From: Scyliorhinus canicula
Lineage: Eukaryota
Length of the DNA: 64,000 bases
Direction of reading: 5' to 3'
Assembly (NCBI RefSeq): GCF_902713615.1
Contig: NC_052159.1
Coordinates: 9,560,018 to 9,624,017 of the forward strand
Position numbers and translations under genes: made by a program. Below are positions 542 to 43,863 of this stretch, piece after piece; within the stretch, counting starts at the first letter, position 1; each line of letters starts with the position of its first letter. Below the pieces are notes generated by a model, which was given only the letters and a program-made list of their open reading frames with translations, did not search any database and was not told the origin of the DNA.

Positions 542-578
542 TTCTTGGTGCTTTCACGGTCAACAAATCTTCCTCAGT
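542..578 (-). CDS. THAP12: THAP12-like coding exon 4 (TEEDLLTVKAPR+1 nt, 37 nt); gene continues left of the window
   Basis: Minus strand reads ttgttatag|ACT GAG GAA GAT TTG TTG ACC GTG AAA GCA CCA AGA A|gtaagt. Splice sites are canonical and the phase continues exon 3. It resembles the short SEDEIRTLKQKK exon recalled for vertebrate THAP12. Confidence 0.85.
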
Positions 579-676: not shown

Positions 677-790
677 CAGCTCTTTTATCCTCTTGTGCTT
701 TTTGCGTTTGCCTTCAGGTTTATTGAGATGACTTGTTAAGTCAAACAAGGTGGGCACAGCATCTTCCTTGAGGACTGTTCTGTAAGGGCT
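677..790 (-). CDS. THAP12: THAP12-like coding exon 3 (SPYRTVLKEDAVPTLFDLTSHLNKPEGKRKKHKRIKEL), containing the THAP AVPTIF-type box
   Basis: Splice sites ttgtttccag|AGC...CTG|gtaaga, 114 nt, phase 0/0. The peptide matches recalled THAP12 SPYRTVLRDNAIPTIFDLTSHLNNPHSRHRKRIKEL. Confidence 0.93.
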
Positions 791-2527: not shown

Positions 2528-2648
2528 GTTTGTGCATATCAGGGATTGTTCAAAGTGTCTCGCACATAGTCTGTATTGTTTGTGAAGCTGTTCGGCAGTC
2601 CGGTTTTCCAGGTCTGCTCTCCGACAGTTCTCCACCCACTTCTGACAC
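2528..2648 (-). CDS. THAP12: THAP12-like coding exon 2 (R-CQKWVENCRRADLENRTAEQLHKQYRLCARHFEQSLICTN), C-terminal half of the THAP C2CH zinc finger
   Basis: Splice sites aatacag|G TGT...AAC|gtaagt, 121 nt. It carries the conserved THAP Trp and the LCxxHF motif. It accepts a phase-2 donor (AG|G = Arg) from either first exon. Confidence 0.95.
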
Positions 2649-7519: not shown

Positions 7520-8260
7520 GGGTCCCAAAGAAAGCAGCGAGGCGCAGACGAAGGGGCTGCACGGACGCTGGTAGGAAAGGGGAAGGCTGGAGGGAGGAAC
7601 AGTAGGGTATGAGGTTAGGGCGAGGTGAAGAGAGACAGGAGCTCAGTCTAGACTCAGGATAAACCAGAGGGACCAGTTTGATGTACATGGTGTGTGAGAT
7701 GCTGTGGAAGGGGGCACAGGATATGCGCATGCGCCCCTCCTCCCGCCCACCCTGGGTGGCGAGGCCTAGCGACGGAAAGTGGGAACACAAGCCCGAGTAA
7801 AGATTTGGGAGCAACATGCTCGCTCGACTAAACACCCAGAACAGGGCGCCACGGCAATCCCTGAATTAACGAATGTGCGTGCTATCTGAACCCCGACAGT
7901 GGGATGCTTTTATTTAAAAACTGGGCATTTATAAATCTGCAGTCCTCACCTCTTGGGGTCTCTGGGGAACCTGAAGAAAGGTAGGTCCGGGTAGTTGGTG
8001 CTCCCCCGGCTACAGTTCGGAGCCGCGCAAAAATTCGGCATTTTTCTTTTCGAGTTTTATTTATTATTCCTTTCCCTTTTTTAATGAGAGAAGGCGGAAT
8101 TTTGCCCTCCCTCCCCCTCGTTCCCTGAAGCAACGACGCCTTTTCCCTTCGTCCAGGGTTGCTCTGCTGCGGCTTCGGAGGTCAAGCTGCTCCTCCGCTA
8201 GACCACAATGCGCCGCGCCAACGCGCCAAAATGCATGCAGAAGCTGTCAGTGCTTCACAC
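7520..8260 (-). promoter_or_regulatory. CpG-rich promoter/first-exon region of THAP12-like exon 1A
   Basis: Local CpG enrichment in non-repetitive sequence. NRF1-type palindrome TGCGCATGCGC at 7724-7734. Boundaries are approximate. Confidence 0.7.
7950..8041 (-). CDS. THAP12: THAP12-like coding exon 1A, proximal (MPNFCAAPNCSRGSTNYPDLPFFRFPRDPK+AG)
   Basis: ATG at 8041, 92 nt, donor AG|gtgagg. MPNFCAAPNC...FFRFPRDP is the THAP12 N-terminus. Orthologue versus tandem paralogue cannot be resolved from this window. Confidence 0.93.
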
Positions 8261-8826
8261 ACTCCTGCAGCTAATGGCAGCTGTGAGGCCACCAGCTTCT
8301 GCATCACTCAACTGGAGTTTGCCGTGGACAAGAAATTTTCAATTGCACTCTTAAAGTGTATTAATTGGGAAGCATGTTCGTTTAATCACACAATTACACT
8401 TTAGAAAGCTATCAGACCTGGCATCTTTCTCTTGCTGTCAACAGTGTAGGCACTTAAACTACTTTGGGATGTTCAGAGGTTGTGAAAAGCACTATATAAA
8501 TTCAAGTTTTTTTTTTACACAACACAAAATCAAGACAGGATGAGACCATGTCGCCCACTGAGGATGCTCCGTCATTCAGTACTATATCCCGGCTGATCTA
8601 CTGCCCGATCACCAATACTCCTTGATTCCAAAAGATCAAACATCTGTCTACCCCAGCCTTGAATGTATAATGGATGCAGCATTCACAGCTCTCTGGGAAA
8701 GGGAATTCACAACCCTTTTGAGTGAGGCAATTTTTCCTCATCTTAGTTTTAAACAATCAGCTCCTTATCCCGAGACTGTGCCCCGTGTTTTAAATTCCCT
8801 GTTAGATCAAACCCATGAAAATCTAT

Positions 8827-9037
8827 GTAAGAAGTCTTACAACACCAGGTTAAAGTCCAACAGGTTTGTTTCGAATCAGAGTGCAGCTCCATTCTCAGGT
8901 GAATCTCCTGCATTCACCTGAGAAAGGAGCTGGGCTCCGAAAGCTAGTGATTCGAAACAAACCTGTTGGACTTTAACCTGGTGTTGCAAGACTTCTTACT
9001 GTGCCCACCCCAGTTAACGCCGGCATCTCCATATCAT
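8827..9037. mobile_element. Penelope-like fold-back (inverted terminal fragments) with a degenerate hammerhead core
   Basis: gtaagaagtcttacaacaccaggttaaagtccaacaggtttgtttcgaatc is inverted at about 8949-8999. CTGAGAA-GGAGC..GCTCC-GAAA near 8918-8942. Confidence 0.75.
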
Positions 9038-9664
9038 CAAAATCTAAATACTTGTCAGCTGGTTCATTAATGTTATTCAAACATTACCCGACACATGACT
9101 AGTGTAATACTAAAAGTCCTCTGAAAGTAGCACATTCTCCTCAGTCATAATAGCAGGTCATGCCAGTTTGCCTGAAGGGGCTCTACATTTTAAAAATCAT
9201 AATATCTCATTCAAATAATGGTGCAACAGTACTGCCATTGGAAGGTTGTCTTGAGTAAGGTGATTGAAAAAAAGTGTTCATGTCTAACCAGTAAACTAAA
9301 AAAAATCCAAATAAATTGTTCAATATGGCTAAAGGTTAGGAGCATAAAAGAATAATCATGGGAGCTTCCCAAGGGCAAATTAATTGTGGAATTAATTAAT
9401 AGGAGCAATGAAGTAAACAATATAAATGGGTTCATAAGAAAACTGTTGCCATTTATGGAGAGAAGAGGATTGAAGGGCTATGGTGAAAAGGCTTGATCTA
9501 TGAAAAAGGTATCAATATTTTAAAAATAACTTGCTTTTATAGAGCTTTTCGAAACAGAACAATCCAAAGTGCTTTATAGTCAATTAAGTACATTTGCGAC
9601 ACTTCCGGTTGCGGTGATGCGGAGCTAAGCCGCACGTTCGGTAGCTCCCGCTATTTTCGGTCTT

Positions 9665-10114
9665 TTGGGCTCTTTAAAGGGCTTGGGGGCCTATGTGACC
9701 GTGGTGTTGAACTCGTTAATGGGCGCTGGGTCGTTCCAGGGGTCCTTGGAGCTGGAGGATGCCCATCGAGTGCTGTTGAGGAAGCCCAAGCCGAACAAGC
9801 CGCCTAGAGCTAGGGCGGTGCTGGTCCATTTTCACCGCTTCGTTGACAGTGTGTGTGTGCTGAGATGGGCGAAGGAGAGGAGCAGCAAGTGGGAGAATGC
9901 AGAGATCCGGATTTATCAGAATTGGAGCGCGGAGGTGGCGAAGGGAAGGGCTGGTTTTAATCGGACGAAGGCGGTGCTTCACAAGAAGGGGGTGAAGTTT
10001 GGCCTGTTACAGCTGGCTCGCCTCTGGGTCACTTATAAAGATCGCCAGCTTTACTTCGATTCCCCGGAGGATGCCTGGGCCTTCGTCCAGGCAGAGAAGT
10101 TGGACTCGAACTGA
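9665..10114 (+). pseudogene. L1 ORF1p C-terminal remnant (RRM/CTD-like); N-terminal half missing
   Basis: AHRVL...PRARAVLVHFHRF...IRIYQNWSAEVAKGRAGFN...GVKFGLLQLARLWVT resembles fish-type L1 ORF1p. Confidence 0.85.
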
Positions 10115-10672
10115 GGGGCTGGGGACTGATGTACATAGTCCATAGGCCTTGTCCTCCTGGGTATCCTTTCGTTTTTCTGGTTGTGTTTGTTGATGCCTTT
10201 TTGCTTATTCGCTTTTTGGGGCTGTTATTTATGTATTTTGGTGCTTTCTTGTTTTTCACTGGTGGAGGGCTGGGGAGCTGTTCGGAGGCCTGCTGGGTCA
10301 CACGCCCTTCTTTTTCCCACGTGTTGGGTCCGGGGGGGTCTGAGATGGAGATGGGCTTTCTTCCCGCACTGGAGGCGCAGTGGGCGGGACCGGCACTGGG
10401 TTGGGGGGGGGGGGGGGGGGGGGGGAGTGGTGGTTATATTACACCGGGGGGGGGGGGGGGGGGGGGGGTCGTTGGGGTGGTGGGATCAGCAGGAGTCGAC
10501 TGACTTACGGAAGTACGATGGGAGGGATTACGCAGCTTGGGGGGGGGTACCGGGTTGCTGCTGGAGGGGCCGAAGGGGAACTACTGGTGATTTGGGGGTT
10601 GGGGGGGGGGTCTGCCACCATGGGGAACGGGCCTGGGGGGTTCTGCGGGCACGTGGTGAGCGAGGGAGAGTT

Positions 10673-12805
10673 ATGGCTAACCGGCACAGAGGGAGGGGGA
10701 AGACCCCCCAGATTCGGCTGGTCACATGGAACGTGAGGGGGCTGAATGGACTGGTGAAGCGGTCCCGGGTCTTGGCGCATTTGAAGGGGCTGGGAGCGGA
10801 CGTGCCTATGCTCCAGGAGACGCACCTTAAGGTGGCGGATCAGGTGAGGCTGAGAAGAGGCTGGGTTGGACAGGTGTTTCACTCGGGGTTAGACGAGAAG
10901 AATCGAGGGGTGGCGATTTTAATTGGTAAGAGCTTGTCGTTCGTGGCGTCAAGTGTGGTGGCGGATAGCTGTGGCAGATACGTAATGGTGAGTGGTAGGC
11001 TTCAAGGGGAGCGGGTGGTTCTGGTTAATGTGTACACCCCCAACTGGGACGATGCAGGTTTCATGCAGCGAATGTTGAGCCGGATTCCGGACCTGGAGAC
11101 GGGGGGCTTGATCTTGGGAGGGGATTTTAACACTGTGTTGGACCCAGCTCTGGATTGTTCGAGGTCTAAGACGGGCAAGAGGCCGGCGGCGGCCACAGTG
11201 CTGAGGGAGTTTATGGATCAGATGGGAGGGGTAGACCCGTGGAGGTTTTTGAGGCTGGGAGGTAGGGAGTTTTCCTTTTTCTCCCATGTCCACAAGGCTT
11301 ATTCCCTGATTGATTTTTTTTTGTCCTCAGCAGGGTGCTAATCCCGAGAGTGGTGGGGACGGAGTATTCGTCGATAGTGATATCTGACCACGCTCCGCAT
11401 TCGGTGGACCTGGAGCTGGGGGAGGGGAAGAATCAGCGCCCGCTGTGGAGGTTAGATGTGGGGCTTCTGTCAGAGGAGGAAGTATGTAGGTGCATAGAGG
11501 GGTATTTGGAAGCTAATGACAATGGGGAGGTGCAAGTTAGGGTGGTCTGGGAAGCGCTGAAGGCGGTGGTTAGAGGGGAGCTGATATCTATTCGTGCACA
11601 CAGGGAGAGAGTTGAGAGGGAGAGGTTGGTGGAAGATATGGTAAGGGTGGACAGGAGGTATGCGGATGTCCCGGAGGAAGGGCTTTTGAGGAAGCGTCGC
11701 AGTCTCCAAGCGGAGTTCAATATACTGACCACCCGGAAGGCAGAGGCGCAGTGGAGGAGGGCGCAGGGAGCGGTATATGAGTACGGGGAGAAGGCAAGTC
11801 AGATGCTGGCCCACCAGTTCCGGAAGCGGGAGGCAGTGCGAGAGATAGGGGGAGTCACAGATACAGGAGGGAACCTGGTGCGGAGTGGTAGGGACATTAA
11901 TGACGTGTTCAGGTCCTTCTACGAGGAGCTGTACCGGTCGGTGCCCCCTAGGGAGGTGGGCAGGATTGACCACTTTCTGGATAAGCTGGAGTTCCCTAGA
12001 GTGGAGGAGGAGCGGGTGGAGGGTCTGGGGACCCCAATCGAGTTGGAGGAGCTGATGGGAGGCGCTGGGGAGCATGCAGACAGGGAAAGCACAGGGTCCT
12101 GACGGGTTCCCGGTGGAGTTTTATAAGAAGTTCTCAGACCTGCTGGGCCCGTTGTTAGTGAGGACACTGAATGAGGCGAGGGAGGGGGGGCCTTGCCCCC
12201 GACGATGTCTAGAGCAATAATTTCACTGATTCTGAAGCAGGATAAGGACCCCCTCCAGTGTGGGTCTTACAGGCCGATCTCGCTCCTCAACGTGGACGCA
12301 AAGTTGTTGGCTAAGATACTGTCCAGGAGGGTGGAAGATGTGGTCTCGCTGGTTATCCATGAGGAGCAAACGGGGTTTGTGAAGGGGAGGCAGCAGAATG
12401 TCAATGTGCGGCGGCTTCTTAATGTTATGATGATGTCATCGGCGGATGGGGAGGCGGAAATAGCAGCATCGATTTGATGCGGAGAAAGACTTCGATAGGG
12501 TGGAGTGGAGCTACCTGTGAGAGGTGTTGAGGAGATTTGGGTTTGGTGAGGGATTCATTAGCTGGGTGAGGCTCCTGTATAGTGCCCCGGTAGCGAGCGT
12601 GGTGACGAATGGGAGGAAGTTGGAGGACTTTCGGCTGTCCGGGGGACGAGGCAGGGGTGCCCCTTGTCTCCCCAGCTCTTCGCGTTAGCGATTGAACCCC
12701 TGGCCATGGCGCTGAGGGATTCGAAGAACTGGAGGGGGATTGTGCGGGGGGAGCATCGGTTGTTGCTGTACGCGGATGATTTACTGTTGTACATCGCGGA
12801 TCCGG

Positions 12806-12846
<41 letters not shown>

Positions 12847-14499
12847 TGCCAGAGGTGTTGAGGATACTTGGGGACTTTTCGGGCTATAAGCTCAACGTGG
12901 GGAAGAGTGAGCGGTTTGTGCTGCACTTGGGGGACCAGGAGAGGGAGACAGGGGAGCTCCCGTTGAAGAGGGCGGAGAGGAGCTTTAGATGTCTTGGCGT
13001 CCAGATAGCTAGGAGCTGGGGGGCCCTACATAGGCTGAACTTTTCCAGGCTGGTGGAACAGATGGAGGAGGAGTTTAGGAGGTGGGATGCGCTGCCACTC
13101 TCCTTGGCGGGCAGGGTCCAGTTGGTTAAGATGACGGTGCTCCCGAGGTTTTTGTTTCTCTTCCAGTGTCTCCCCATCTTGATTCCAAAGGCTTTCTTTA
13201 GGAGGGTTAATAAGAGTATTCTGGGGTTCCTGTGGGCGCGGAAGACCCCGAGAGTGAGGAGGATATTCCTGGAGCGAGGCAGAGAGGTAGGTGGTTCGGC
13301 GTTGCCCAACCTGTGTGGGTACTACTGGGCTGCGAATGTGGCAATGATTCGTAGGTGGGTGATGGAGGGGGAGGGTGCCACATGGAAGAGGTTGGAGGTG
13401 GCGTCCTGTGTGGGCACGAGTTTGGAGGCGTTGGTGATGGCCCCACTCCCACCGGCAAGGTACTTTACGAGTCCAGTAGTGGTGGCTTCCCTCAAAATTT
13501 AGGGGGCAGTGGAGGCGGCATAGGGGGGATGTGAAGGCCTCAGTTTGGACCCCGATACAGGGCAACCACCGGTTTGCACCAGGGAGAATATATGGTGGGT
13601 TTTTGAGTTGGCATAGGGCAGGCATCAGGCGGATGGGGGACCTGTTCCTCAAGGGGAAATTTGCGACCTTAGAGGAGTTGGAGGGGAAGTGGGATCTCCC
13701 CGCTGGGAATATTTTCAGGTATATGCAGATTAGGGCGTTTGTTAAGCGGCAGGTGGCGGAGTTTCCGCTATTGCCGCCAAGGGGGGGTGCAGGATAGGGT
13801 GCTCTCGGGGACCTGGGTCGGTGAGGGTAGGATCTCAGCAATTTATCAGGTGATGCAGGAGGGGGAGGAGGCCTTGGTGGAGGAGCTGAAAGCGAAGTGG
13901 GAGGAGGAGTTAGGGGAGGAGATTGAAAGCGAAGTGGGAGGAGGAGTTAGGGGAGGAGATTGACGAGGGGAAGTGGGCGGACGCCCTGGGGAGGGTGAAC
14001 TCGTCCTCTTCTTGCGCACGGCTCAGCTTAATTCAGCTGAAGGTGCTACATAGGGCACACATAACTGGGGCCAGGCTGAGCTGGTTCTTTGGGGGGTGAG
14101 GGCAGGTGTGGGAGGTTTTGGGGAGGCCCGGCGAATCACACCCACATGTTCTGGGCGTGTTCGGCGTTGGAGGGGTTCTGGAAGGGTGTGGCGGGGACCT
14201 TGCCCAAGGTGGTCGGTTCCAGGGTGGAACCGGGCTGGGGGCTCGCTATCTTTGGGGTAGCATCGGAGTCGGGAGTGCAGGAGGCGAGAGAGGCCGGTAT
14301 TCTGGCCTTTGCGTCTCTAGTAGCCCGGCGTAGGATTCTTTTACAGTGGAGGGATGCAAAGCCTCCGAGCCCGGAATCCTGGATTAACGACATGGCCGGG
14401 TTCATCAAAATGGAGAAGGTCAAGTTTGCCCTGAGGGGGTCGGTGCAAGGGTTCTTCCGGCGGTGGCAGCCTTTTCTTGATTTCCTGGCAGAGTGTTAG
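10673..14499 (+). pseudogene. L1 ORF2p (APE endonuclease, reverse transcriptase, C-terminal Cys/His knuckle), frameshifted
   Basis: Motifs TWNVRGLN, LQETHL, GGDFN, SDHAP, YRPISLLNVDAK, QGCPLSP, YADD and CxxxxxxANHTHMFWAC are spread over several frames with stops. Confidence 0.93.
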
Positions 14500-16680
14500 G
14501 GGGGTGGTCAATCTCAGCAGCAACCGGGGGGGGGGAATTATGAGTCTGTGAAGGGGGTTTGTTTTTGCAACTATATGTTTGTTACTTTCTTTTTTGTTAT
14601 TAATTTATTGCTTTGTATTGGGGGAGGGGCTTTTCTTTCTGTTTTTTCTATGCCTTGTTTATTTTATTGTTGGGAGAAAATTTGAATAAAAATTATTTTA
14701 AAAATAAAATTAAGTACATTTGCAGTGTAGTCACTGTTGCAATGTAGAGAAATGGCCACCAGTTTGCACGCAAACAAACAGCAACCTGATGCAAAGTGTG
14801 GAGTTCTCTTCTGTAAATGGCAAGTGATGTTAGATCAATAGTAAATTTTAAATCTGAAATCAATATATTTTTGTTATCAAAAGGTATCAAGGATTATGGT
14901 GACACAGCGGTTAGCACCGCTGCCTTGGGTGACGAGTGACTGCCTGTAAAGTTTGCACGTTCTCCCAGTGTCTGTTTCGAGTTCCTTCCGGGTGCTCCAG
15001 TTTCCTCTCAGAGTTCAACGGTGGATTGGGCATGCTGAACTGCCCCTTAAGTGTCCAAATGTTAGATGAGGTTTCAGGGATGGGGCATGGAAGTGGGCCG
15101 AAGGAAGGTGTTCTTTTGGAGGGTCAATACAGACTCAATGGGCTGAATGGCCTCCTTCAGCACTGTAGGGATTCTATGATTCTTTGATTATTGGACAACG
15201 GCCATGGAATTAGGCACATATCTGCCAGAATCTCATTGAATAGTGGAATAGAATTTAAGGGGCTAAATGGCCTAATCCTGTTCCTACAAAGTGGCCACAT
15301 TATTTTTTTATGTCATAGAAAGTTCTAAGATCAATTTTAGTTCAGATAATATCTTTGCTCTTGCTGGATTTGCACTAAAATACAAATATCTTGGCATCAG
15401 CTTTGCAAAATACAGGTAAAATAGAAGTATTTTGAGTCATGTTTTGCAAGACCTTGGATTCTTCATCAAGCCAGACAGAGTAGTTACCTGTCAAGGACCT
15501 GGTAGAACTTAGTATCTGTGCAGCTCTTGAAACAAAGGTCAGGGTCGGCACAGTGGTGCAGTGGGTTAGCACTGCTGTCTCATGGCGCCGAGGACCCAGG
15601 TTCAATCCCAGCCCCGGGTCACTATCTGTGTGGAGTTTGCACATACTCCCCGTGTCTGCGTGGGTCTCACCCCCCCCAACCCAAAGATGTGCAGGGTAGG
15701 TAGATTGGCCTTGCTAAAATTGCCCCTTAATAAAAAAAATAGAAACGAGGATCAAGAATTGCATGAGGTTCAAGAATTGGTGTTAGAAAATTCCATTTTT
15801 ACAATGGGAAATGCTTAGGAACTTGATTAAGTACTGTAATCTAATTAGAAGAATCAGAAGCTAAAAACATACAGTCCAAACTGGACTTTTAAATATGTGA
15901 ATTTCCACTTTACTATAAGGGCATTCCCTCCATGATGGCAAAGTTGACTTCTGTTGTACATTTTGAGAAGATTTTTGCGTATCTTCCATGCATTTGTCAA
16001 ATTTCCAGATAGCACAGTCCCCAACTTGACTTATGACGGCTGTATCAAATTCTTCCTGCTTATTGGATTCTATGTATTCTAATCTTTACATTTAAAAAAT
16101 GACAAATGACATCCAAGGGCTGCCGTCCAGCCAACCTCTTCTCTGAGGGTAATCAATTTGGCTACAGCAGAGAAAAGCCCAGAAAAATTGTACCAGATGG
16201 TTTAGCCAAACCAAGTCATGGGGGTGGCTTAAAGGCACACTGGAATAGTGGTCAGGAAATTGAAATTTCACTCAAAAGATGCTCATCATTGATATTTTGC
16301 CCCTCTAGAACCTAAAAACAGAAATTTTAAAAAATGCTACAAGAACATTTGCAGAGGATGGAAACTAAGCACCCAATTTAATATCTTCAAGACAAAGGGA
16401 ATTGCCTCTCTATTTATTCTCAAGTTTTAACAGTTAGACCTAGTTTTCAGAGGTTGGGTAGAACAAGCATAGCAGTTAACAATAAAGATTTTCACAAGGT
16501 AAAAAGAAGAATGGAAAATGCACAAGTTAATGAAACAAACTCAGATGAAGTATAGCTTTTTAATAATAGCATGGATAGGACTGATTTTTTTTGTAAGGGG
16601 TAGCAGATTTTTGAGGAATAATACGCATTTGGGATAAGCAGAGAATAACAAGCCAAAATAAACATGTTAATAAATAAGAG

Positions 16681-16920
16681 GGGGCAGCACGGTGGCGCAG
16701 TGGGTTAGCCCTGCAGCCTCACGGCGCCGGGGTCCCAGGTTCGATCCCGGCTCTGGGTCACTGTCCGTGTGGAGTTTGCACATTCTCTCCGTGTTTGCGT
16801 GGGTTTCGCCCCCACAACCCAAAGATGTGCAGGGTAGGTGGATTGGCCATGCTAAATTGCCCCTTAATTGGAAAAAAATAATTGTGGACTCTAAATTTAA
16901 AAAATAAATAAATAAATAAG
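16681..16920 (+). mobile_element. HE1/V-SINE-like tRNA-derived SINE, short poly(A)-tailed form (representative; others about 5945-6166 -, 15542-15740 +, 36228-36645 -, 39870-40085 -, 40480-40702 -, 42584-42819 +, 48616-48835 +, 48885-49124 -, 56972-57200 +, 62053-62282 +, 63408-63585 +)
   Basis: A box TGGCGCAGTGG, B box GGTTCGATCCC, central GTGGAGTTTGCACATTCTCCCCGTG domain, A-rich tail and 9-18 bp TSDs. Confidence 0.9.
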
Positions 16921-17805
16921 AGATAGCATAGTGGGAGAGGAAAGAAAACATGGTGGAAATTTTGTCGAACATCAGTTTGCTACTTTTTAGTCTGTCTCTT
17001 TCTCTTACCAAAAACAGTGGCAGAAAGGGGAGGGATGCAACTGAACCCACGCAACATCCAGATTAGTAAATGGTATTCAAAACAAAACGGACATGATGGT
17101 CCTCAAAATGGCTCAATGGGTAAAGCATCTCAGGACGTGCTCTTCAGCTTCACAGGTCAGGTCTGAGCCAAGTTAACTGATCTCAGCTAAGATGCCAGTG
17201 GGGTATAGTCTCCAACTCTTCCCTTAGCCAAATTCCAAATACAATCAGTGTTCCCTCTAATGTCCGGTTTTAAGGCTGGAAGGTGTCTGTATATATGTTA
17301 GTCGAGATAGTGTTGGGTTTTGCTGTAATCCCTTCCTTTAAAAATACCTACTCTCTGATAATTTGCTCTCGAGACTGAAAAATAAAGACTAGCTACTTGG
17401 ACAATGTGTTAAAAGGCTGTCAACATGATACCTCACATGATTATAAGTAGCAGGCATTATCTAGACGTTTAAATTTATGAGCACAAACCTGTATCCAAAA
17501 TATACTTTTTTTTGCCAATTGTTCTTCTCTTGCTGGAACGTAGCTACATTGGCACTGGGTTCCTTCCATCAACTCACCGGAATGAAAGAGCCCGAGTATC
17601 TGCTAGCCAGCTACTGGCCATGAATATACTGCTGCCAAGTCTAATCCAATTTTCACCAGGTACTCACACACAAACTTTCCAACAATTAACTGGATAACTA
17701 TCAGGAACATGAATCATTAACAAATTCCCTTCCCAAGACCAATAGTGCGGAAGTAAATTGTACTGTTGCTCCCAAGCCAGCTACATTCAGTCAACTCAGC
17801 GGAGA

Positions 17806-18330
17806 CGTTGGCGCAGCGGTGTTTTCACTGGATTCGTAATCCAGATACTCAGGGTAATGCTCTGGGGTCCCAGGTTCGAACCCCACCACGGCAGATGGTG
17901 AAATTAAATAAAAATCTGGAATCAAAAGTCTAATGATGACCATGAAACCTTTGTCGATTGTTGTAGTAAAAACCCAACTGGTTCACTAATGTCCTTCAGG
18001 GAAGAAAATCTGCCGTCCTTACCCAGGCTGGCCTACATGGGCTTCCAGACCAGTTGACTCTTAACTGCCACCCCCACCCGACCAAAATGGCCTAGCAACT
18101 GTCTGTGTGGAGTTTGGACATTCTCCATGTGTCTGCGTGGGTTTTACCCCCACAACCCAAAAATGTGCAAGTTAGGTGGATTGGCCTAGCTAAATTGCCC
18201 CTTAATTGGAAAAAACTAATTGGGTACTCTAATTATATAAACAAAAATGGCCCAGCACAGCACTCGGGCCAAGGGCAATTAGGGATGGGCTCAACCAGCG
18301 ATGCCCACATCCCAAGAACAAATTTTAAAA
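17806..18330 (+). mobile_element. Older tRNA-headed SINE family, about 400 bp (others about 150-340 -, 3875-4500 +, 21560-21750 +, 28790-29115 +, 40230-40480 +, 48510-49221/53382-53470 +)
   Basis: Recurrent gtaatccagag...aaaacccaactggttcactaatgtccttcagggaagaaaatctgcc...gcccacatccca. Confidence 0.75.
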
Positions 18331-18574
18331 AAGACAAGTAATCAAATCTCAAAAAATATTACTTTAACTTTAAAGATCAGATTGTCTTTTATCAAGCAGT
18401 GATAGTTGCTGTATCTTGGGTATTTTAAAGCTCACCAGTTAAGTAAAGTCCCCTTTTCTGACCATAGGCTGCTTTGTCCTCGAGAGGGAGAGCTGACTGG
18501 TGGTGATTTAACTGAGGATCACCACACCTCAGACAAAGGGCAAGGTTGAGAAGGCGGGGCCTTCATGAAGTCAA

Positions 18575-20500
18575 GGAAAATCGACGCCATTCACTAGCGA
18601 GGTGTTCCAATTATTTATGCATGCCAACGGGGTACAGCACATCTGGACTGCCCCGTACCATCCATCTTCAAATGGGTTTGTGGAGCGGGTGCTTCAAACA
18701 AGGCTTGTGGAAACAGACTGCGGACTCACTTGATACGAGGCTGGCAAGGTTCTTGTTCTATTATCAACCATGCCTCATGTCACAACAGCGGTAGTATCAG
18801 CAGAGCTATTAACGGGCTGGTGCCTCGGAACCTGATGTTTCCAAGTCCTGGCGGAAAGGTAGAGTCAAAACAGGATGTTCAAAAGAAATACCACAACCAC
18901 AAGACGCTTGAGAGAAGCTTTAATCCGGGATCTGGGCCATATATATCCGGAATTTTGGTGACGACGCCCATTAGTTCCCTGGTGTCATAGAACATTACAG
19001 CGCAGTACAGGCCCTTCGGCCCTCGATGTTGCGCCGACCTGTGAAACCCCTCTAAAGCCCATCTACACTATTCCCTTATCGTCCATATGTCCAATGACCA
19101 TTTGAATGCGTTTAGTGTTGGCGAGTCCACTACTGTTGCAGGCAGGGCATTCCACGCCCGTACTACTCTCGGAGTAAAGAACCTACCTCTGACATCTGTC
19201 CTATATCTATCTCCCCTCAATTTAAAGCTATGTCCCCTCGTGCTAGACATCACCATCCGAGGAAAAAGGCTCTCACTGTCCACCCTATCTAATCCTCTGA
19301 TCATCTTGTATGCCTCAATTAAGTCACCTCTTAACCTCCTTCTCTCTAACGAAAACAGCCTCAAGTCCTTCAGCCTTTCCTCATATGATCTTCCCTCCAT
19401 ACCAGGCAACATCCTGGTAAATCTCCTCTGCACCCTTTCCAATGCTTCCACATCCTTCCTATAATGTGGCGACCAGAACTGCACGCAATACTCCAAATGC
19501 GGCCGCACCAGAGTTTTGTACAACTGCAACATGACCTCATGGCTCCGAAACTCAATCCCTGTACCAACAAAAGCTAACACACCGTACGCCTTCTTAACAA
19601 CCCTCTCAACCTGGGTGGCAACTTTCAGGGATCTATGTACATGGACACCGAGATATCTCTGCTCATCCACACTACCAAGAATCTTACCATTAGCCCAGTA
19701 CTCTGTCATGTTGGAGAAAACAGGGCCCCGTGCCGTATAAGGTCAGAACCGGAGAGAAGACCATGTGGAAACATGTGGACCACCTCAAGTGCAGAAAGCC
19801 CACCTCGGAGGAAGCCATGCCAGGCACATCGGTACCTCCACTACATCTGGCACCACTACGTAGCCAAGAGGCACAACCCATCGTGGACCAACATCTGGCC
19901 ATCAGGACGATGACAACTCTGATATGGACACGGAAGCATCCGCCTTTACGGACGCCGCTGCGATCGGAGCCAAAACCCTGACATTGTCCCGCCAGTGTTT
20001 TTCGCAGCAAAGGCAATCAATGAGTCGGCACCGGCCCTCCAATCCAGCCCACTGCTGGCAAAGTGGCGAAGGCCCCCTCAACTGGCTATTGGAGGGGAAC
20101 TTTTGGACTGGAAAGTGGAGGGGGTAATAACCCTCACAATGCCCATGGGTAGACCCTAATTATCTTCCCGTGGGACTCGCCGAACACGAGCTTCCCTGCT
20201 AGTGGGCAAAGGCCTGCCCAGCTGGGGCTCGTAATTTGACTGTATAAAAGCCAGCCGGGACAGGGGCCAACATCCTGGTAGTCCCAATTGGGGCTTTTAC
20301 TGAGTGTGTTTGGGAGAAGGCAGGAGAATGGGGATGAGAAAAATATCAGCCATGATTGAATGGCGGAGCAGACTCGATGGGCCGAGAGGCCTAATTCTGC
20401 TCCTATGTCTTATGTTGTCTATGCCCCAGTAATGGCCGTTTCCTTTGACTTGAATAAACCATCGTTTACTCAACCCCCTGGACCTTCATTTGAACTACTC
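18575..20500 (+). mobile_element. Gypsy 3' fragment (integrase C-terminus plus 3' LTR about 20125-20500), interrupted by CR1 insertions
   Basis: PFTSEVFQLFMHANGVQHIWTAPYHPSSNGFVERVLQT and GPVPYKV...KHVDHLK. The LTR resembles those at 49222 and 53107. Confidence 0.8.
18986..19703 (-). mobile_element. Young 5'-truncated CR1 LINE (ORF2 C-terminus open for 213 aa)
   Basis: LYKTLVRPHLEYCVQFWSPHYRKDVEALERVQRRFTRMLPG...RRRLRGDLIEAYK. tgtcat is repeated at both junctions (18983, 19704). Confidence 0.93.
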
Positions 20501-21744
20501 GCTGGCATAGAGAGTAAAATGCCAGCAGGCAAGTTGAGAATCATACAGGAAAGGAGGCCACCAATTGGCCCATCATGCCTGTGCCAGCTCATTGAAAGAG
20601 CTATCCAATTTGTCTACTCTCCTGCCCTTTCCTCATAGCCCTGCAAATTTCACCTTTTTACATATATATTCAATTTCCTTTTGAAAGTTACGATTCAATC
20701 TGCTTCCACCACCTTTTCAATCAGTGCATTCAAGATCTTACCTCATTGCATAAAAATTGCTGGAACTGGGTGTGCATTTTGGCTTGTTTAGTATGCAGGG
20801 GTATACCATGAATTTCACTTCTTTTGCTCCACGTTTTAATTACCTTAAAAAGTTCATAAGTCGTGGAAGAAAAATCTGCATTTCACTTCACAAATTCAGT
20901 AAAGACACATGTTTTTTCTTGCCAACTGTTCCAAGTCAGAAATGGGGAGAAACCAATCCTTGAGATCAATGTTCCCAACATCAGTTCCATCTCTGCCAGT
21001 TAAAATTCACTATAATATTGCTGAAATTGCTTTTAAGTAAAGAAACCATAAAGGCCCAGAATGCAAGATGGGCAGGGGTAGGAAAACACTCCCAGGTGGT
21101 CACTTTATTTACCCCGAGAGCAGTCAGATTGGAGATGAGGTCAATAGTGATTAGGTTGCAACCAAATTGAGTTTTAAGGGTTGGCGGATCTAGACCCACT
21201 CCAAAGACCTCAGGGCCAGTCAACTATATAACTTTCACTTAAGGACTGAGTCAAAGTCAAAGATGTCACCTTTCAGTGAGATGTTAGGCTGAGGCCCCCC
21301 TCGTAGATGGAAGCAACAGTTCCTGCACTGCTATTACAAGTAGCAGAGGAGATACCGTTCAATGAAACAGACAATCTAGCCATTATTTCATTGCCATTTG
21401 TTAAACCTTGTCGAGATTCCATTCAAAACAGCAAACACATGTCAAATCTTTCCATGCTAAAACCCTTTGGGACCTTGTTGCACGCACAGTTGGTGGCCAC
21501 AATTCCCTTCTACAACAACAGGCAGGCTTCAGATCATGCCCTGTGAACACATTATGGGGCAAAGCGGGTAATGTCACTGGACTGGTAATCCAGAGGCTCA
21601 GGCTAATACTCTGGGGACACAAGATCAAATTCCACCATGGCAGCTGGTGGAATTTAAACTCAACTGATATCCCTGGAATATAAAGCTAATCTCAGTGATG
21701 GTGGCCGTGACTACTTTCATCGACTGTCGCAGAAACCCATCTTG

Positions 21745-23825
21745 TTCACTGACGCCACCCCTGTTTAAGAAGGGAGGGAGGCAGAAGATGGGAAATTATA
21801 GGCTGGTTAGCCTGACTTCGGTCAATGGTAAGATTTTAGAGTCCATTATTAAAGATGAGAGTTCATAGAATTTACAGTGCAGGAGGCCATTCGGCCCATC
21901 GAATCTACACTGGCTCTTGGAAAGAGCACCCTATCCAAGTCCACACCGCCACCCTATCCCCATAACCCAGTAAATATACAATTTTGGACACTAAGGGCAA
22001 TTTAGCACAGCCAATCCACCTAACCTGCACATCTTTGAACTGTGGGAGGAAACCGGAGCACCTGGAGGAAACCCACGCAGACATGGGGAGAATGTGCAGA
22101 CACCACACAGAGTGACCCAGCGCGGAATCGAACCTGGGACCCTGGAGCTGTGAAGCAATTGTGCTAACCACTATGCTACCGTGCTCCGAGATTGCTGAGA
22201 ACTTGGAAGTGCATGATAAAATAGGACTGAGTCAGCACGGCTTCGTCAAGGAGGATCATGCCTGGCAAATCTGTTGGAATTCTTTGGGCAGGTAATGAAG
22301 AAGTTAGACAAAGGAGAACCTGAGGACGTGATCTATTTAGATTTCCAGAAGGTCTTTACAAGGTGTCGAAAAGGGGGCTATTAAATAGGTTAAGAGCCCA
22401 TCGTGTTATCAGTAAGATGCTGGCATAGATAGAGGATTGGCTGATTGGCAGAAAGTAGGGATAATGGGGTTTTTCTTCAGGATGGCAGCCGGTGACTAGT
22501 GGTGTGTGTCAGGGGTCAATGTTGACACAATATTGATTAACGATCTGGAAGAAGGAACTGAGGGCATTGTTGCTAAGTTTGCAGATGATACAAAACAATG
22601 TAGAGGGATGGGTATTATTGAGGAGACAGGGGGACTGCAGAAGGACTTGAACAGGCTAGGAGTGTGGGCAATGAAGTGGCAGATGGAATACAATGTGGAT
22701 AAGTTTGAGGTTAAATAAGTGTGAATGGACCTACCTACAACTTGCTATAACATTATATTCTGCAGTCTCTCCTTCCTTCCCTATGTACGGTATGTATTGT
22801 TTATACGGTATGTATTGTTTGTACAGCATGCAAGGAAGAATACTTTTCACTGTATACTAATACATGTGACAATAATAAATCAAATTAAAGTTATGCACTT
22901 TGGAAGGAAGAATGGAGGCATAGGCTATTTTCGAAATGGGGAAATGCTGAGGAAATTTAAAGCACTTGGGAGCCCTAGTTCAGGATTTTCTTAAGGTTAA
23001 CGTGCAGGTTCAGTCGGCAGTTAAGAAGGCAAATACAATGACAGCATTCATAGACATAGAACATACAGTGCAGAAGGAGGTCATTTGGCCCATCGAGTCT
23101 GCACCGACCCACTTAAGCTCTCACTTCCACCCTATCCCCGTAACCACTCCTCACCTTTTTGCCCACCAAGGACAATTTAGCATGGCCAATCCATCTAACC
23201 TGCACGTCTTTGGACTGTGGGAGGAAACCGGAGCACCCCACACAGACACGGGGAGAACATGCAGACTCCGCAGACAGTGACCCAGCGTGGAATCGTACCC
23301 TGGACCCTGTGAAGCCACAGTGCTATCCACTTGTGCTACCGTTCTGCATGTCGAGAGGGTTAGAATACAAGAGCTGGGATGTACTTCTGAGGTAGTATAA
23401 GGCACTTGTCAGACCCCATTTGGAGTATTGTGTATAGTTTTGGGCCCCATATCTAGGGATGTGCTGGCCTTGAAAAGGGTCCAGAGGAGGTTCACAAGAA
23501 TGATCCCTGGAATGAAGAGCTTGTCATATGAGGAGCGTTTGAGACTCTACTCATTGGAGTTTAGAAGGATGAGGTTTGGGATGACCCAGAGGGCACAGCC
23601 TCAGGCTGATGGGTCGATCCTTTAAAACAGAGATGAGGATTTGGAACTCTTTTCCGCAGAAGGTTGTGAAGGCCAAATCACTGAGTGTCTTTAAGACAGT
23701 GATAGATAGGTTCTTGACTAAGAAGGGGAATGGGGATGAGAAAAACATCAGCTATGATTGAATGGTAGAGTAGACTCGATGGGCCAAGTGGCCTAATTCT
23801 GCTCATATGTCTTATGGTCTTATTA
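21745..23825 (+). mobile_element. Decayed CR1 LINE (RT and C-terminus) with nested antisense SINEs (about 21863-22187 and 23049-23347) and a Rex-type 3' tail insert (about 22715-22888)
   Basis: NYRLVSLTS, QHGFVK, YLDFQK, KFADDTK, RVQRRFTRMIPG, and a CR1-type 3' end. Confidence 0.88.
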
Positions 23826-24469
23826 TTTCCTTGAGGGAAGCAAATCTGCCGTCAGTATGGCCTGCCCATGATTCCACCCACAGTGGTTGTCTCTGAAAAT
23901 ACCGAATTTTCCACTCCGTTCACTGGATGGGCAGCCGTGCTGCTGGGGTTTACAGACACACCCACATCCCAGGAAAAAATAACGAAAAAATACAGGAGGG
24001 AGGTGGGGAACAAGATGATCGGCAGCTGAATAAAATGAAAGTATCGTACACTCATATCACCACCACACAGCTGAATCGGCATGGGGATGGGCAGATTAAA
24101 TTGACACAAAATGGGAAAGCTCAGGCAGCACGGTACAAGTGGATAGCACTGTGGCTTCACAGCGCCAGGGTCGATTCCCCACTGGGTCACTGTCTGTGCG
24201 GAGTCTGCACGTTCTCCCATGTCTGTGTGGGTTTCCTCCAGGTGTTCCGGTTTCCACCCACAGTCCAAATATGTGCAGGTTAGGTGGATTGGCCATGCTA
24301 AATTGCCCTTCGTGTCCAAAATTGCCCTTAGTGTTGGGTGGGGTTACTGGGTTATGGGGATGGGGTGGAGGTGTGGGCTTGGGTAGGGTGCTCTTTCCAA
24401 GGGTCGGTTCAGACTCGATGGGCCAAATAGCCACCTCCTGCACCATATGTTATAGGTTGGAAAAGCAAA

Positions 24470-24668
24470 ACATAAAGTTGCCATAGTCCCAGGTGACTCT
24501 TTGAGAAGGGGGGCTGACTGGTGGCTGTTTAACCAGGGGGTCACCATACCTCAGCCAAGGGACAAGGTTGAGAAGGTGGTACCTCAGCTGGTACGGGAAT
24601 TGAACCCGCGCTGCTGGCCTCGCTCTGCATCACGAACCAGCTGTCCAGCCAACTGAGCTAAACCGGTT
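24470..24668 (-). mobile_element. tRNA-derived SINE with a GTGGTGATCCTCAGGTTAAA core (possibly MetaSINE-type); copies about 18440-18570, 26200-26420 and 60820-60980
   Basis: Four related dispersed copies with a CCGGTTTAGCTCAGTTGG head and GGTTCAATTCCC B box. The family name is tentative. Confidence 0.7.
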
Positions 24669-24679
24669 TTTGGGGAGGG

Positions 24680-25330
24680 GGGAGAGTGGTGGTTGTGGAG
24701 TGGGATATGTGGGTGTCCCTTTAAGAGATGGGGCCGCGCATGCGCGCTTCACGCCACCCGCCATGTTTGTGGATATGGGGGGGGGGGGGGGGGGGGGAGG
24801 TGGGATGGAGGAAACAAACACGGATTTCAGATTAAATACAAAGAGCGGGGACGATCCCACTCCGTCTGCCCCCCCACCCCAAATGTGTTAGCGGCGGCAG
24901 AACATTCCAGCAACAGTCACGAACCCGCCTCACCTCTCGGGGTCTTTGGGGAACCTGAAGAAAGGGATGTCGGGGCAGCTGGTGCTCTTCCTGCTGCAGT
25001 TGGGCGCCGCGCAGAAGTTCGGCATCGTCCCTTGATGACCTTTCTTTCAAATTGTTGTTGTTTTTCCTGCTCCCCCACCCACTCGCGCGCGCAAACGCAC
25101 GCTCTTTCCCAGGCTCGCCGAGACTGACACGCCGCCGCCGCCGCCGCCGCACGATTGCAAATGGCCAGAGCGCTGCGGCTGGGCCGCTACGTTACGTCCT
25201 ACGTGGGCACGCAGGAGGAGTGCCCCTCCGGTCCTCCTGCATCCCACAGTGCCACGCGATTGGGGGGGGGGGGGCGTGGCTGTGCACGGCCGTTATGCTG
25301 TCCGCAGGGAGAGTGGTCCTCCTCTATCCC
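24680..25330 (-). promoter_or_regulatory. CpG island promoter of THAP12-like exon 1B
   Basis: CpG dense, with a (GCC)n run near 25130-25150. NRF1-type CGCGCATGCGCG at 24735-24746 and YY1-type CCGCCATGTT near 24759. Confidence 0.75.
24934..25025 (-). CDS. THAP12: Second THAP12-like coding exon 1B, distal (MPNFCAAPNCSRKSTSCPDIPFFRFPKDPE+AG)
   Basis: ATG at 25025, 92 nt, donor AG|gtgagg, no stops. It is 24/30 aa identical to exon 1A and lies in its own CpG-rich region. Confidence 0.9.
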
Positions 25331-25825
25331 ACAGTGCCAAGCGGCTCACACAGTTCATTGTCCCATTTCTCTTCCCACATAATTCCCATCCACTCCACAC
25401 TTGCATTGCCAACCCACCAGGAATCCCCAGGACACGGCCGTTGTCCAATCCTGGAGAAAAATAATAATGATCAGGACATTGAAAAAATAGTTTAGAGAAC
25501 GATACTTTCTTTGACCATTTCCTCTTGCTGTATATGAGGGTATATATTGAAAATTATTGGGGGCGGAGCAGTGGAGAAAGGCTGTTTGGCTGACAGTTGA
25601 GCATTATCCATGAATCTTTCTGCTTTACAGTTGGCATGGGGGGAGGGGAGGGGGGGGTGCAGCACGTCACAAGGATGAATGGAGTGGGGGCAAGACGTGC
25701 GGTGTAACCTCCGGGACTTCATTGACAAGGAGTTGGCAATCCAGCTGAGGGATGCACCAAAGCTTGGGGGCAGCCAACACAGGGATGCAATGAGGAAAAG
25801 GTTGCCATCTAAGTTCAGCCACAGT

Positions 25826-30100: not shown

Positions 30101-30304
30101 CCTTTGTGTGTGGCTGTAATAAGCCAGGTGTAAACCCTCGGTGCATAAACACTAAGTATAACTATGTGGCGAGGTTCTGCCTATCCCCGGTATTGCGAAG
30201 GATGGCTCTACTCATGCTGCCATAATGTTCGTTTCATTATACTGAAGTGCAACGTGATCTATGTCGAAAACTTGCATATTTGTTTTTGAATTTTTCCAAT
30301 TAAG

Positions 30305-43795: not shown

Positions 43796-43863
43796 ACAAT
43801 AATATAGCCAGCAATGCCCACATCCTCTAAATTAATTAAATAAAATACACCCCTGAAGTCATT

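What the first reader, a model, noticed from the sequence alone, without database searches (positions are those of the whole stretch)
7950..25025. Two paralogous first coding exons, each with its own promoter, appear to feed one THAP12-like gene body
Seen: two 92-nt exons 17 kb apart on the minus strand encode MPNFCAAPNCSRGSTNYPDLPFFRFPRDPK (1A) and MPNFCAAPNCSRKSTSCPDIPFFRFPKDPE (1B). Both have an ATG, both zinc-ligand Cys, no stops and an identical phase-2 AG|gtgagg donor. They differ at 7 purely synonymous codons and 6 amino acids (13, 16, 17, 20, 27, 30), and their flanks do not align by eye. I found no second exon 2/3/4 between them, and the ORF track shows no long non-retroelement ORF that could be the large terminal exon. 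Known: the THAP C2CH finger is split here between exon 1 (two Cys) and exon 2 (Cys, His), and THAP domains bind DNA sequence-specifically. Inference: this is an old exon-plus-promoter duplication kept by purifying selection. Promoter choice would swap the N-terminal half of the DNA-binding finger on a constant body, a variable-first-exon design I do not know of for THAP genes.
Basis: partly seen in the sequence, partly recalled or inferred. Interest (0 to 1): 0.8.

Follow-up and report, generated by a model that had tools for sequence, protein, structure and literature searches.

The report
Two alternative first exons of shark THAP12
A catshark THAP12 gene has two duplicated first coding exons with their own promoter regions that join one shared gene body, an arrangement kept in every shark and ray examined and already present, uncommented, in public gene models.

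Summary

- **The exons.** Exon 1A (8041-7950, minus strand) and exon 1B (25025-24934, minus strand) are 92 nt each and 77/92 identical. Both have an ATG and an AG|GTGAGG donor. The window holds only one exon 2, 3 and 4.
- **Match to public models.** 1B-2-3-4 and 1A-2-3-4 reproduce the first 121 residues of two RefSeq isoforms of one Scyliorhinus gene.
- **Other species.** In 17 elasmobranch species, sharks and batoids, paired isoforms are identical after residue 31. They differ at four fixed positions: 13 K/G, 17 C/Y, 20 I/L, 27 K/R.
- **Gene order.** Skate and sawfish loci show the same order, B, then A, then a single exon 2. A skate mRNA contig joins B directly to exon 2 and skips A.
- **Evolution.** The exons group by type, not by species, and orthologous dN/dS is low.
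- **Promoter co-duplication.** Each exon carries the same flanking landmarks: GCAYTGTGGN6GGAGG 142-227 nt upstream, and GCGCATGCGC about 170-216 nt into the intron. The promoter region was therefore duplicated with the exon.
- **Outgroup.** Callorhinchus has a single intact, B-like exon.

Read-level junction evidence for this species could not be obtained. Functional divergence of the two isoforms is inferred, not shown.

The parts
24934..25025 (-). Exon 1B: distal first coding exon. Encodes residues 1-30 plus 2 nt, type B (K13, C17, I20, K27). Donor AG|GTGAGG.
   Evidence: Equals the N-terminus of RefSeq isoform X1. Type B is present in 17+ elasmobranch species.
7950..8041 (-). Exon 1A: proximal first coding exon, type A (G13, Y17, L20, R27). 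Same length, phase and donor as 1B.
   Evidence: Equals the N-terminus of RefSeq isoform X2. Type A is invariant at residues 1-28 across sharks and batoids.
2528..2648 (-). Exon 2, the shared acceptor for both first exons. Holds the second half of the C2CH finger (C59, H62).
   Evidence: It is the only copy in the window. Single copy also in the Amblyraja, Pristis, Chiloscyllium and Callorhinchus loci.
677..790 (-). Exon 3: end of the THAP domain (AVPTLFD) and a basic stretch.
542..578 (-). Exon 4 (TEEDLLTVKAPR). The large terminal exon lies left of the window.
   Evidence: By analogy with the skate mRNA mapping, which has 5 exons.
25233..25252 (-). Promoter motif GCACTGTGGGATGCAGGAGG, 208-227 nt upstream of the 1B ATG. 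A second copy lies at 25318-25337.
   Evidence: 3 matches to GCAYTGTGGN6GGAGG in 64 kb, all upstream of the two exons, with 0.00 expected. Orthologous matches upstream of B in Amblyraja and Pristis, and 7 copies in Callorhinchus.
25318..25337 (-). Second copy of the same motif upstream of 1B.
8176..8232 (-). Conserved block upstream of 1A. It holds TTTGGCGCG/TTGGCGCGG (E2F-like, from my own knowledge) followed by the shared motif GCATTGTGGTCTAGCGGAGG (8211-8192), 151-170 nt upstream of the ATG.
   Evidence: conserved between catshark, bamboo shark, skate and sawfish..
7724..7796 (-). Conserved intronic block 154-226 nt after the 1A donor. It ends in the palindrome GCGCATGCGC (7725-7734).
24736..24745 (.). 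GCGCATGCGC palindrome starting 189 nt after the 1B donor. It is the counterpart of the one after 1A.
   Evidence: One occurrence per 3-kb region against 0.05-0.1 expected. Also at +170 in Pristis B and at +202 to +216 in all four A modules.
24751..25400 (.). CpG island around 1B (GC 0.62, CpG o/e 0.77). The island at 1A is weaker.
9665..14550 (+). LINE-type retroelement filling part of the 17-kb interval between 1B and 1A. It is not part of the gene.
   Evidence: Exo_endo_phos hit at 10181-11338.

Best explanation
**What it is.** This is the 5' part of the elasmobranch THAP12 gene (52 kDa repressor of the inhibitor of the protein kinase). It has a two-member 'variable first exon' design.

**Origin.** A module of about 0.5 kb was duplicated in tandem. 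The module comprised an upstream promoter motif, the 92-nt first coding exon with its donor, and a GCGCATGCGC element about 200 nt into the intron. The duplication predates the shark-batoid split.

**How it works.** Transcription starts either at the distal module (1B) or at the proximal module (1A, 17 kb downstream, inside the intron of B transcripts). Either donor is spliced to the single exon 2. The two proteins are identical except for residues 13, 17, 20 and 27, plus lineage-specific 16, 19, 29 and 30. These positions lie in the first half of the THAP C2CH finger.

**Shown.** The exon pair, the single gene body, conservation of both exons and of their flanking motifs, orthology by type, and B-to-exon-2 splicing in a skate mRNA.

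**Inferred.**
- Each module fires as an independent promoter with different regulation.
- The four fixed residues tune the finger. By alignment they fall in loop L1 and strand beta1 of THAP1, and position 13 corresponds to the phosphate-contacting R13. The likely effect is on DNA-backbone affinity or on an N-terminal protein contact, not on base specificity, because the equivalents of the THAP1 base-contacting residues Q3 and K24 are N3 and R24 in both types.
For: - **Exons and homology limits:**
- **Single exon 2 and 3 in the window:**
- **Window products equal RefSeq X1 and X2 over 121 residues:**
- **Both N-terminal types exist as isoforms of one gene in 17 species.** The isoforms are identical after residue 31, with four fixed differences.
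- **Same genomic order.** In Amblyraja, B is at 10001, A at 22693 and exon 2 at 25456. In Pristis, they are at 10001, 24053 and 26662.
- **mRNA evidence.** A skate mRNA contig maps B, exon 2, 3, 4 and the terminal exon, skipping A. It begins 117 nt upstream of the B ATG.
- **Selection.** Orthologous A has dN 0.014 and dS 0.52. Orthologous B has dN 0.03-0.06 and dS 0.16-0.24. A versus B has dS 0.7-1.2.
- **Tree.** The A and B groups each appear in 100% of bootstrap trees.
- **Shared promoter motif.** It occurs only upstream of the two exons, with 0 expected, and at the orthologous places in other species.
- **Shared intronic palindrome** at similar spacing.
- **Conserved non-coding blocks around A**.
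- **RNA contigs.** Probable RNA contigs from 7 studies (1B) and 9 studies (1A) hold about 0.3-0.48 of each 601-nt region. That is the size of the exon plus a 5' UTR.
- **Residue mapping to THAP1** and THAP1 contact residues (PMC2879526).
Against:
- **A-to-exon-2 joining rests on gene models, not on a transcript I could inspect.** The sources are RefSeq and one independent C. punctatum model.
- **1A may sometimes be an internal exon.** A possible acceptor (gcttcag) lies about 80 nt upstream of the 1A ATG and is kept in 3 of 4 species.
- **B may be the major form.** All 10 full-length skate transcript proteins listed are type B, so A may be minor.
- **THAP12 has not been shown to bind DNA directly** (PMC13631171). 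Any effect on DNA binding is extrapolated from THAP1.
Confidence: 0.88

Rival explanations
1. The architecture is as above, but only the promoters matter. The duplication was kept because the two promoters divided expression domains between them (subfunctionalisation). The four amino-acid differences have no functional consequence.
For: - The differences are few. Two of them (I/L, K/R) are conservative.
- The equivalents of the THAP1 base-contacting residues are unchanged.
- The two upstream regions differ in motif content and CpG density.
- One run holds the 1A region at 0.48 of its words but the 1B region at only 0.03.
Against: - All four positions are invariant within each type across 17 species, sharks and batoids. 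Positions 16, 19, 29 and 30 do drift.
- Callorhinchus shows V20 and R27, so these sites can change.
- K13G removes a charge at the position of THAP1 R13, which contacts DNA phosphate.
Confidence: 0.35
2. Exon 1B, or exon 1A, is the first exon of a separate or interleaved paralogue with its own downstream exons.
For: Callorhinchus has tandem THAP12-like copies near its locus, so gene-level duplication does occur in chondrichthyans.
Against: - There is no second exon 2 or 3 in the 64-kb window, nor in the Amblyraja and Pristis loci.
- A skate mRNA joins B to the only exon 2.
- Isoform pairs are identical after residue 31 in 17 species.
Confidence: 0.02
3. One of the two exons is a dead relic of a partial duplication, and gene predictors picked it up only because it looks coding.
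For: A decayed copy of the first exon, with a stop and a frameshift, does exist near the Callorhinchus gene. So such relics occur.
Against: - Both exons keep the ATG, frame, zinc ligands and donor in every species seen.
- Orthologous dN/dS is about 0.03 for A and 0.14-0.39 for B, while neutral flanks no longer align.
- Both regions are partly held by probable RNA contigs from many studies.
- Conserved promoter motifs flank both exons.
Confidence: 0.03

Closest known systems
[quoted passage not shown]
   Same: Paralogous first exons lie in tandem, each preceded by its own promoter. Each is spliced in a mutually exclusive way to one set of constant exons. The variable exon encodes part of the recognition domain.
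   Different: There are only two members here. The variable exon is very short (30 codons) and encodes half of a zinc finger rather than a whole domain. The pair has stayed frozen at two since before the shark-batoid split, instead of expanding and turning over.
THAP12 / PRKRIR / P52rIPK of tetrapods and teleosts
   Same: It is the orthologue. The first 110 residues are 70-75% identical. The THAP domain and the DUF4371 body are shared, and the exon 1 / exon 2 split of the finger is the same.
   Different: The tetrapod, teleost and Callorhinchus proteins seen here have one N-terminal type (K13, R27). Elasmobranch proteins also carry a C-terminal repeat extension that brings the protein to about 1200-1440 residues.
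Tandemly duplicated, mutually exclusive exons that swap part of a binding domain (for example FGFR2 IIIb/IIIc; from my own knowledge)
   Same: Duplicated exons of equal length and phase give isoforms that differ in part of a binding domain on a constant body.
   Different: In those cases the choice is made by splicing of internal exons. Here the choice is made by which promoter fires.
THAP1 zinc finger bound to DNA (PDB 2KO0; PMC2879526)
   Same: The fold family is the same. Residues 3-26 align without gaps, so the variable positions map to loop L1 (13, 17) and the start of beta1 (20).
   Different: THAP12 has no demonstrated DNA target (PMC13631171). THAP1 has no alternative first exons that I know of.

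Membership tests
THAP12 orthologue (THAP domain plus hAT-derived DUF4371 body) | N-terminal C2CH THAP finger (C-X2-4-C-X35-53-C-X2-H) with the conserved P, W, F and AVPT positions | tested here: met
   C5 and C10 are in exon 1. C59, H62, W35 and F63 are in exon 2. AVPTLF is in exon 3. phmmer hits THAP2, THAP11 and THAP1 structures. PF05485 is recorded on the full-length models.
THAP12 orthologue (THAP domain plus hAT-derived DUF4371 body) | DUF4371 / hAT-like body downstream | tested here: met
   The body is not in the window, because the terminal exon lies to its left. The RefSeq proteins whose first 121 residues equal the window's products carry PF14291.
THAP12 orthologue (THAP domain plus hAT-derived DUF4371 body) | Best matches outside elasmobranchs are THAP12 rather than other THAP genes | tested here: met
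   after elasmobranchs and Callorhinchus, all hits are THAP12 or thap12b, at 70-75% identity over residues 1-110.
Variable-first-exon gene architecture | Two or more paralogous first exons in tandem, in the same orientation, upstream of one set of constant exons | tested here: met
Variable-first-exon gene architecture | Each variable exon is spliced directly to the same constant exon, in a mutually exclusive way | tested here: met
   B to exon 2 is seen in a skate mRNA contig. A to exon 2 and B to exon 2 appear in the gene models of 17 species. This was not confirmed with reads in the window's species (one search failed).
Variable-first-exon gene architecture | Each variable exon has its own promoter and transcription start | tested here: inconclusive
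   Conserved, shared motifs lie upstream of and just inside the intron after both exons. There is a CpG island at B. The skate mRNA starts 117 nt upstream of the B ATG. The share of RNA contig words fits an exon plus a contiguous 5' UTR. No CAGE or read-start data are available.
Variable-first-exon gene architecture | Variable exons lack a used acceptor, so they are never joined to each other | not tested
   A possible gcttcag acceptor lies upstream of the 1A ATG. No model or transcript joining B to A was seen.

The most novel reading that the evidence does not exclude
The two first exons give THAP12 two functionally distinct fingers. Type B keeps the ancestral K13 and C17, which Callorhinchus also has. 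Type A (G13, Y17, L20) has altered DNA-backbone anchoring through loop L1, or an altered N-terminal protein contact. The two promoters deploy the two forms in different cell states: 1A has E2F-like sites, and 1B has a ZNF143-like site in a CpG island. Elasmobranchs would then have kept a promoter-selected switch of a transcription-factor finger for roughly 300 million years or more. That would be a natural isoform pair for finding out what THAP12's finger binds.
Probability: 0.3. Interest if true: 0.6.

Novelty: new member of a known kind. Interest (0 to 1): 0.45.

Why it matters
THAP12 is essential in mouse and is linked to B-cell proliferation and to an epileptic encephalopathy. Even so, its finger has no known DNA target (PMC13631171).

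Elasmobranchs offer a natural pair of isoforms under strong selection. They differ at only four fixed residues in the first half of that finger, and each is driven by its own copy of the ancestral promoter. This gives a ready-made contrast for binding assays.

It is also a clean, datable example of how duplicating an exon with its promoter creates a variable-first-exon gene. The fact itself is already in RefSeq isoform lists. What this report adds is the evolutionary reading:
- The pair is present in all 17 elasmobranch species with paired models, and the exons are orthologous by type.
- The promoter was duplicated with the exon.
- Four positions are fixed between the types.

Tried and rejected
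- **Read laying on window:2500-8100.** I used four runs at min_likeness 80, hoping to see 1A-to-exon-2 joints and 1B letters lying on 1A.
- **The search for homologous proteins with the first 120 residues.** I was looking for short transcript-derived fragments from catshark. It returned only tetrapod and teleost fragments and nothing from elasmobranchs.
- **The look-up of encoding contigs for Heterodontus and S. torazame.** It gave gene ranges but no DNA, because the files were too large.
- **Exon B in Chiloscyllium punctatum.** It was not found within 10 kb upstream of A. That stretch has 1185 N, and B is 12.7-17 kb upstream of A in the other species. This is no evidence of absence.
- **Literature searches.** Searches for THAP12 with 'alternative first exon' and with 'shark' found nothing relevant.
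- **The search of earlier findings.** It returned only this same finding.
- **Rejected readings.** A separate paralogue, a retrocopy and recent gene conversion are all rejected. The retrocopy is excluded because homology runs 6 nt into the intron and the flanking motifs are shared. Gene conversion is excluded because the exons group by type.
Full report
**The observation**

On the minus strand, 8041-7950 (exon 1A) and 25025-24934 (exon 1B) are 92-nt open segments. Each starts with ATG and ends in AG|GTGAGG.

They differ at 15 of 92 nt. There are seven synonymous codons and six replacements, at positions 13, 16, 17, 20, 27 and 30. NG86 gives dN 0.10 and dS 0.68.

blastn of 3 kb on each side finds collinear homology only from the ATG to six bases past the donor (98 nt, 84.7%). 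All other hits are dispersed repeats.

Exon 2 (2648-2528) completes the split codon and carries the second Cys and the His of the finger. Exon 3 is 790-677 and exon 4 is 578-542. A permissive tblastn of the exon 2 and exon 3 peptides over the whole window finds no second copy. The 17 kb between the two first exons is largely retroelement sequence.

**One gene, two N-termini, in many species**

A search with the exon 2 peptide led to a 1384-residue Heterodontus protein. From there I reached the THAP12-like proteins of elasmobranchs. Listing the members of their clusters and tabulating N-termini gave a clear pattern.

One gene carries both types as isoforms in 17 species with paired models:
- **Sharks:** Scyliorhinus (two species), Heterodontus, Heptranchias, Cetorhinus, Carcharodon, Stegostoma, Hemiscyllium and Chiloscyllium.
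- **Batoids:** Rhinoraja, Amblyraja, Narcine, Hemitrygon, Hypanus, two Mobula species and Pristis.
- **Type A** reads ...SRGSTNYPDLPFFRFPRDP...
- **Type B** reads ...SRKSTNCP[D/E]IPFFRFPKDP...

In all 17 pairs the two proteins have equal length and are identical after residue 31. Positions 13 (K/G), 17 (C/Y), 20 (I/L) and 27 (K/R) always differ in the same way. Positions 16, 19, 29 and 30 vary by lineage.

The window's 1B-2-3-4 and 1A-2-3-4 products equal the first 121 residues of RefSeq isoforms X1 and X2 of a Scyliorhinus gene. They also match the corresponding S. torazame isoforms. The isoform pair is therefore already in public annotation. Two literature searches and a 2026 review of THAP proteins do not discuss it.

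**Genome and transcript evidence from other species**

| Species (locus) | Exon B | Exon A | Exon 2 | Exon 3 |
|---|---|---|---|---|
| Amblyraja radiata (L004) | 10001 | 22693 | 25456 | 28317 |
| Pristis pectinata (L005) | 10001 | 24053 | 26662 | 31364 |

Each locus has a single exon 2 and a single exon 3. In Chiloscyllium punctatum, A lies 3.1 kb upstream of exon 2.

A 5-kb mRNA contig assembled from a public skate run maps to the Amblyraja locus in five pieces: 5' UTR plus B (9884-10092), exon 2, exon 3, exon 4 and a 4.5-kb terminal exon. It skips A. This is direct transcript evidence for the B-to-exon-2 junction across an intron that contains A.

Callorhinchus has one intact first exon, of B-like sequence (K13, C17, V20, R27). 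It has no A-type exon in its 8.4-kb intron 1 or in 10 kb upstream.

**Evolution**

| Comparison | dN | dS |
|---|---|---|
| Orthologous A exons, shark versus batoid | 0.014 | 0.52 |
| Orthologous B exons, shark versus batoid | 0.03-0.06 | 0.16-0.24 |
| A versus B within a species | 0.10-0.14 | 0.7-1.2 |

In a maximum-likelihood tree of the 92-nt exons, the A exons and the B exons each form one group in 100% of bootstrap trees. Callorhinchus falls between them.

The duplication therefore predates the shark-batoid split, and there has been no later homogenisation. Tetrapods and Callorhinchus have K13 and R27. So type A is derived at 13, and also at 17 and 20 relative to Callorhinchus, while type B is derived at 27 and 20. 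After that early divergence both types stayed fixed.

**The promoter was duplicated too**

The pattern GCAYTGTGGN6GGAGG occurs three times in the 64-kb window, all on the minus strand. The matches lie 151-170 nt upstream of the 1A ATG, and 208-227 and 293-312 nt upstream of the 1B ATG. None is expected by chance.

In Amblyraja and Pristis the pattern occurs exactly twice, upstream of B and upstream of A. In C. punctatum it occurs once, upstream of A. In Callorhinchus it occurs seven times in tandem upstream of the single exon.

A GCGCATGCGC palindrome lies 170-216 nt after the donor of both catshark exons, of Pristis A and B, and of C. punctatum A. In Amblyraja A it carries one mismatch at +202. 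These are single occurrences per 3-kb region, against 0.05-0.1 expected.

The duplicated unit was therefore a module of about 0.5 kb: motif, exon, then intronic palindrome.

Exon A has its own additional conserved features. An E2F-like TTTGGCGCG pair lies directly upstream of the shared motif. A 70-nt intronic block is also conserved across sharks and batoids.

The reverse complement of the shared motif (for example ATCCCACAGTGC) resembles the TCCCA...TGC core of the ZNF143 SBS1 site quoted in PMC3627581. That comparison, like the E2F and NRF1 labels, is a resemblance only and was not tested.

**Expression in the window's species**

Contigs that are probably RNA hold about 0.29-0.35 of the sampled words of 24700-25300. 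These come from 7 studies. Nine studies hold 0.23-0.48 of 7750-8350. That is the size expected for a 92-nt exon plus a contiguous 5' UTR, and not for genomic DNA.

One run holds the 1A region (0.48) but almost none of the 1B region (0.03).

Junctions and start sites in this species therefore remain unverified at read level.

**What the difference may do**

THAP12 residues 3-26 align without gaps to THAP1. In the THAP1-DNA complex:
- Q3 and K24 make base contacts.
- K11, R13 and Y14 of loop L1 anchor the loop to phosphates.
- V20-K24 form the strand that enters the major groove (PMC2879526).

Both THAP12 types have N3 and R24. The fixed differences fall at position 13 (charge lost in type A), at 17 in loop L1, at 20 at the start of the strand, and at 27 just after it.

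The most likely effect is on affinity or backbone docking, or on an N-terminal protein contact. It is less likely to be a change in the bases read. THAP12 is reported to oligomerise through its N-terminal region and has no demonstrated DNA target (PMC13631171).

These four sites are invariant within each type across 17 species, while neighbouring sites drift. That argues the differences are not neutral, but it is an inference.

**Verdict**

This is a two-member variable-first-exon gene of the UGT1, GCNT2 and protocadherin kind (PMC1885805). It was created by an ancient duplication of exon plus promoter, and it is conserved across the sampled elasmobranch species.

It is a new, undiscussed member of a known kind rather than a new kind, and the isoforms themselves already sit in RefSeq.

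Noticed in passing
window 7724-7796 (-): About 70 nt of intron, 154-226 nt after the 1A donor, is conserved between catshark, bamboo shark, skate and sawfish. It reads TCRGGCTTGTGYTYCCACTTYCCG...GCGCATGCGC and has ETS-like and NRF1-like motifs. It could be a downstream promoter element, or the start of a further non-coding first exon.
   Followed up: partly
L003 27460-27550 (-), Callorhinchus milii: A decayed copy of the THAP12 first exon lies about 2.6 kb beyond the 3' end of the gene, in inverted orientation. It reads MPNFCTAPNCS*, has a frameshift, and keeps its donor. The 3' end of a second THAP12-like gene (1492 residues) lies upstream, at L003 1-2767. Holocephalans therefore have their own duplications at this locus.
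   Followed up: partly
proteins P0001, P0152-P0162 (outside the window): Elasmobranch THAP12 is 1200-1440 residues long, against about 760 in tetrapods and 785 in Callorhinchus. The extra length is a C-terminal array of His/Gln/Glu-rich repeats (...VELQHH...EIQHH...).
   Followed up: no
window 43751-45450: This is the strongest CpG island of the window (GC 0.62, o/e 1.12). It is made of repeated blocks that hold TGACGTCA and GCGCATGCGC palindromes, four of the latter. The flanks are G-runs and 'gagaatcgc' repeats. It may be a repeat family or the promoter of a neighbouring gene.
   Followed up: no
proteins P0263, P0259, P0261 (S. torazame isoforms X1, X4, X5): Further isoform models begin with a peptide (…EETHADTWRTCRLHSESDP…) that looks like translated shark SINE sequence joined to exon 2. 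Similar SINE-derived ORFs lie in the window between 1A and 1B, for example 16667-17050 (-). They probably reflect repeat exonisation or model artefacts.
   Followed up: no
window 10000-14500 (+) and 30300-34800 (-): Two GC-rich (about 0.6), strongly GC-skewed LINE copies lie in opposite orientation. The first has an endonuclease-domain ORF.
   Followed up: partly
exons 1A and 1B, all species: Type A exons use A/T-ending codons (AAT, TTT, TGT, GCT) where type B exons use G/C-ending ones. Synonymous divergence between sharks and batoids is two to three times lower in B than in A. This may reflect the stronger CpG island at B.
   Followed up: no
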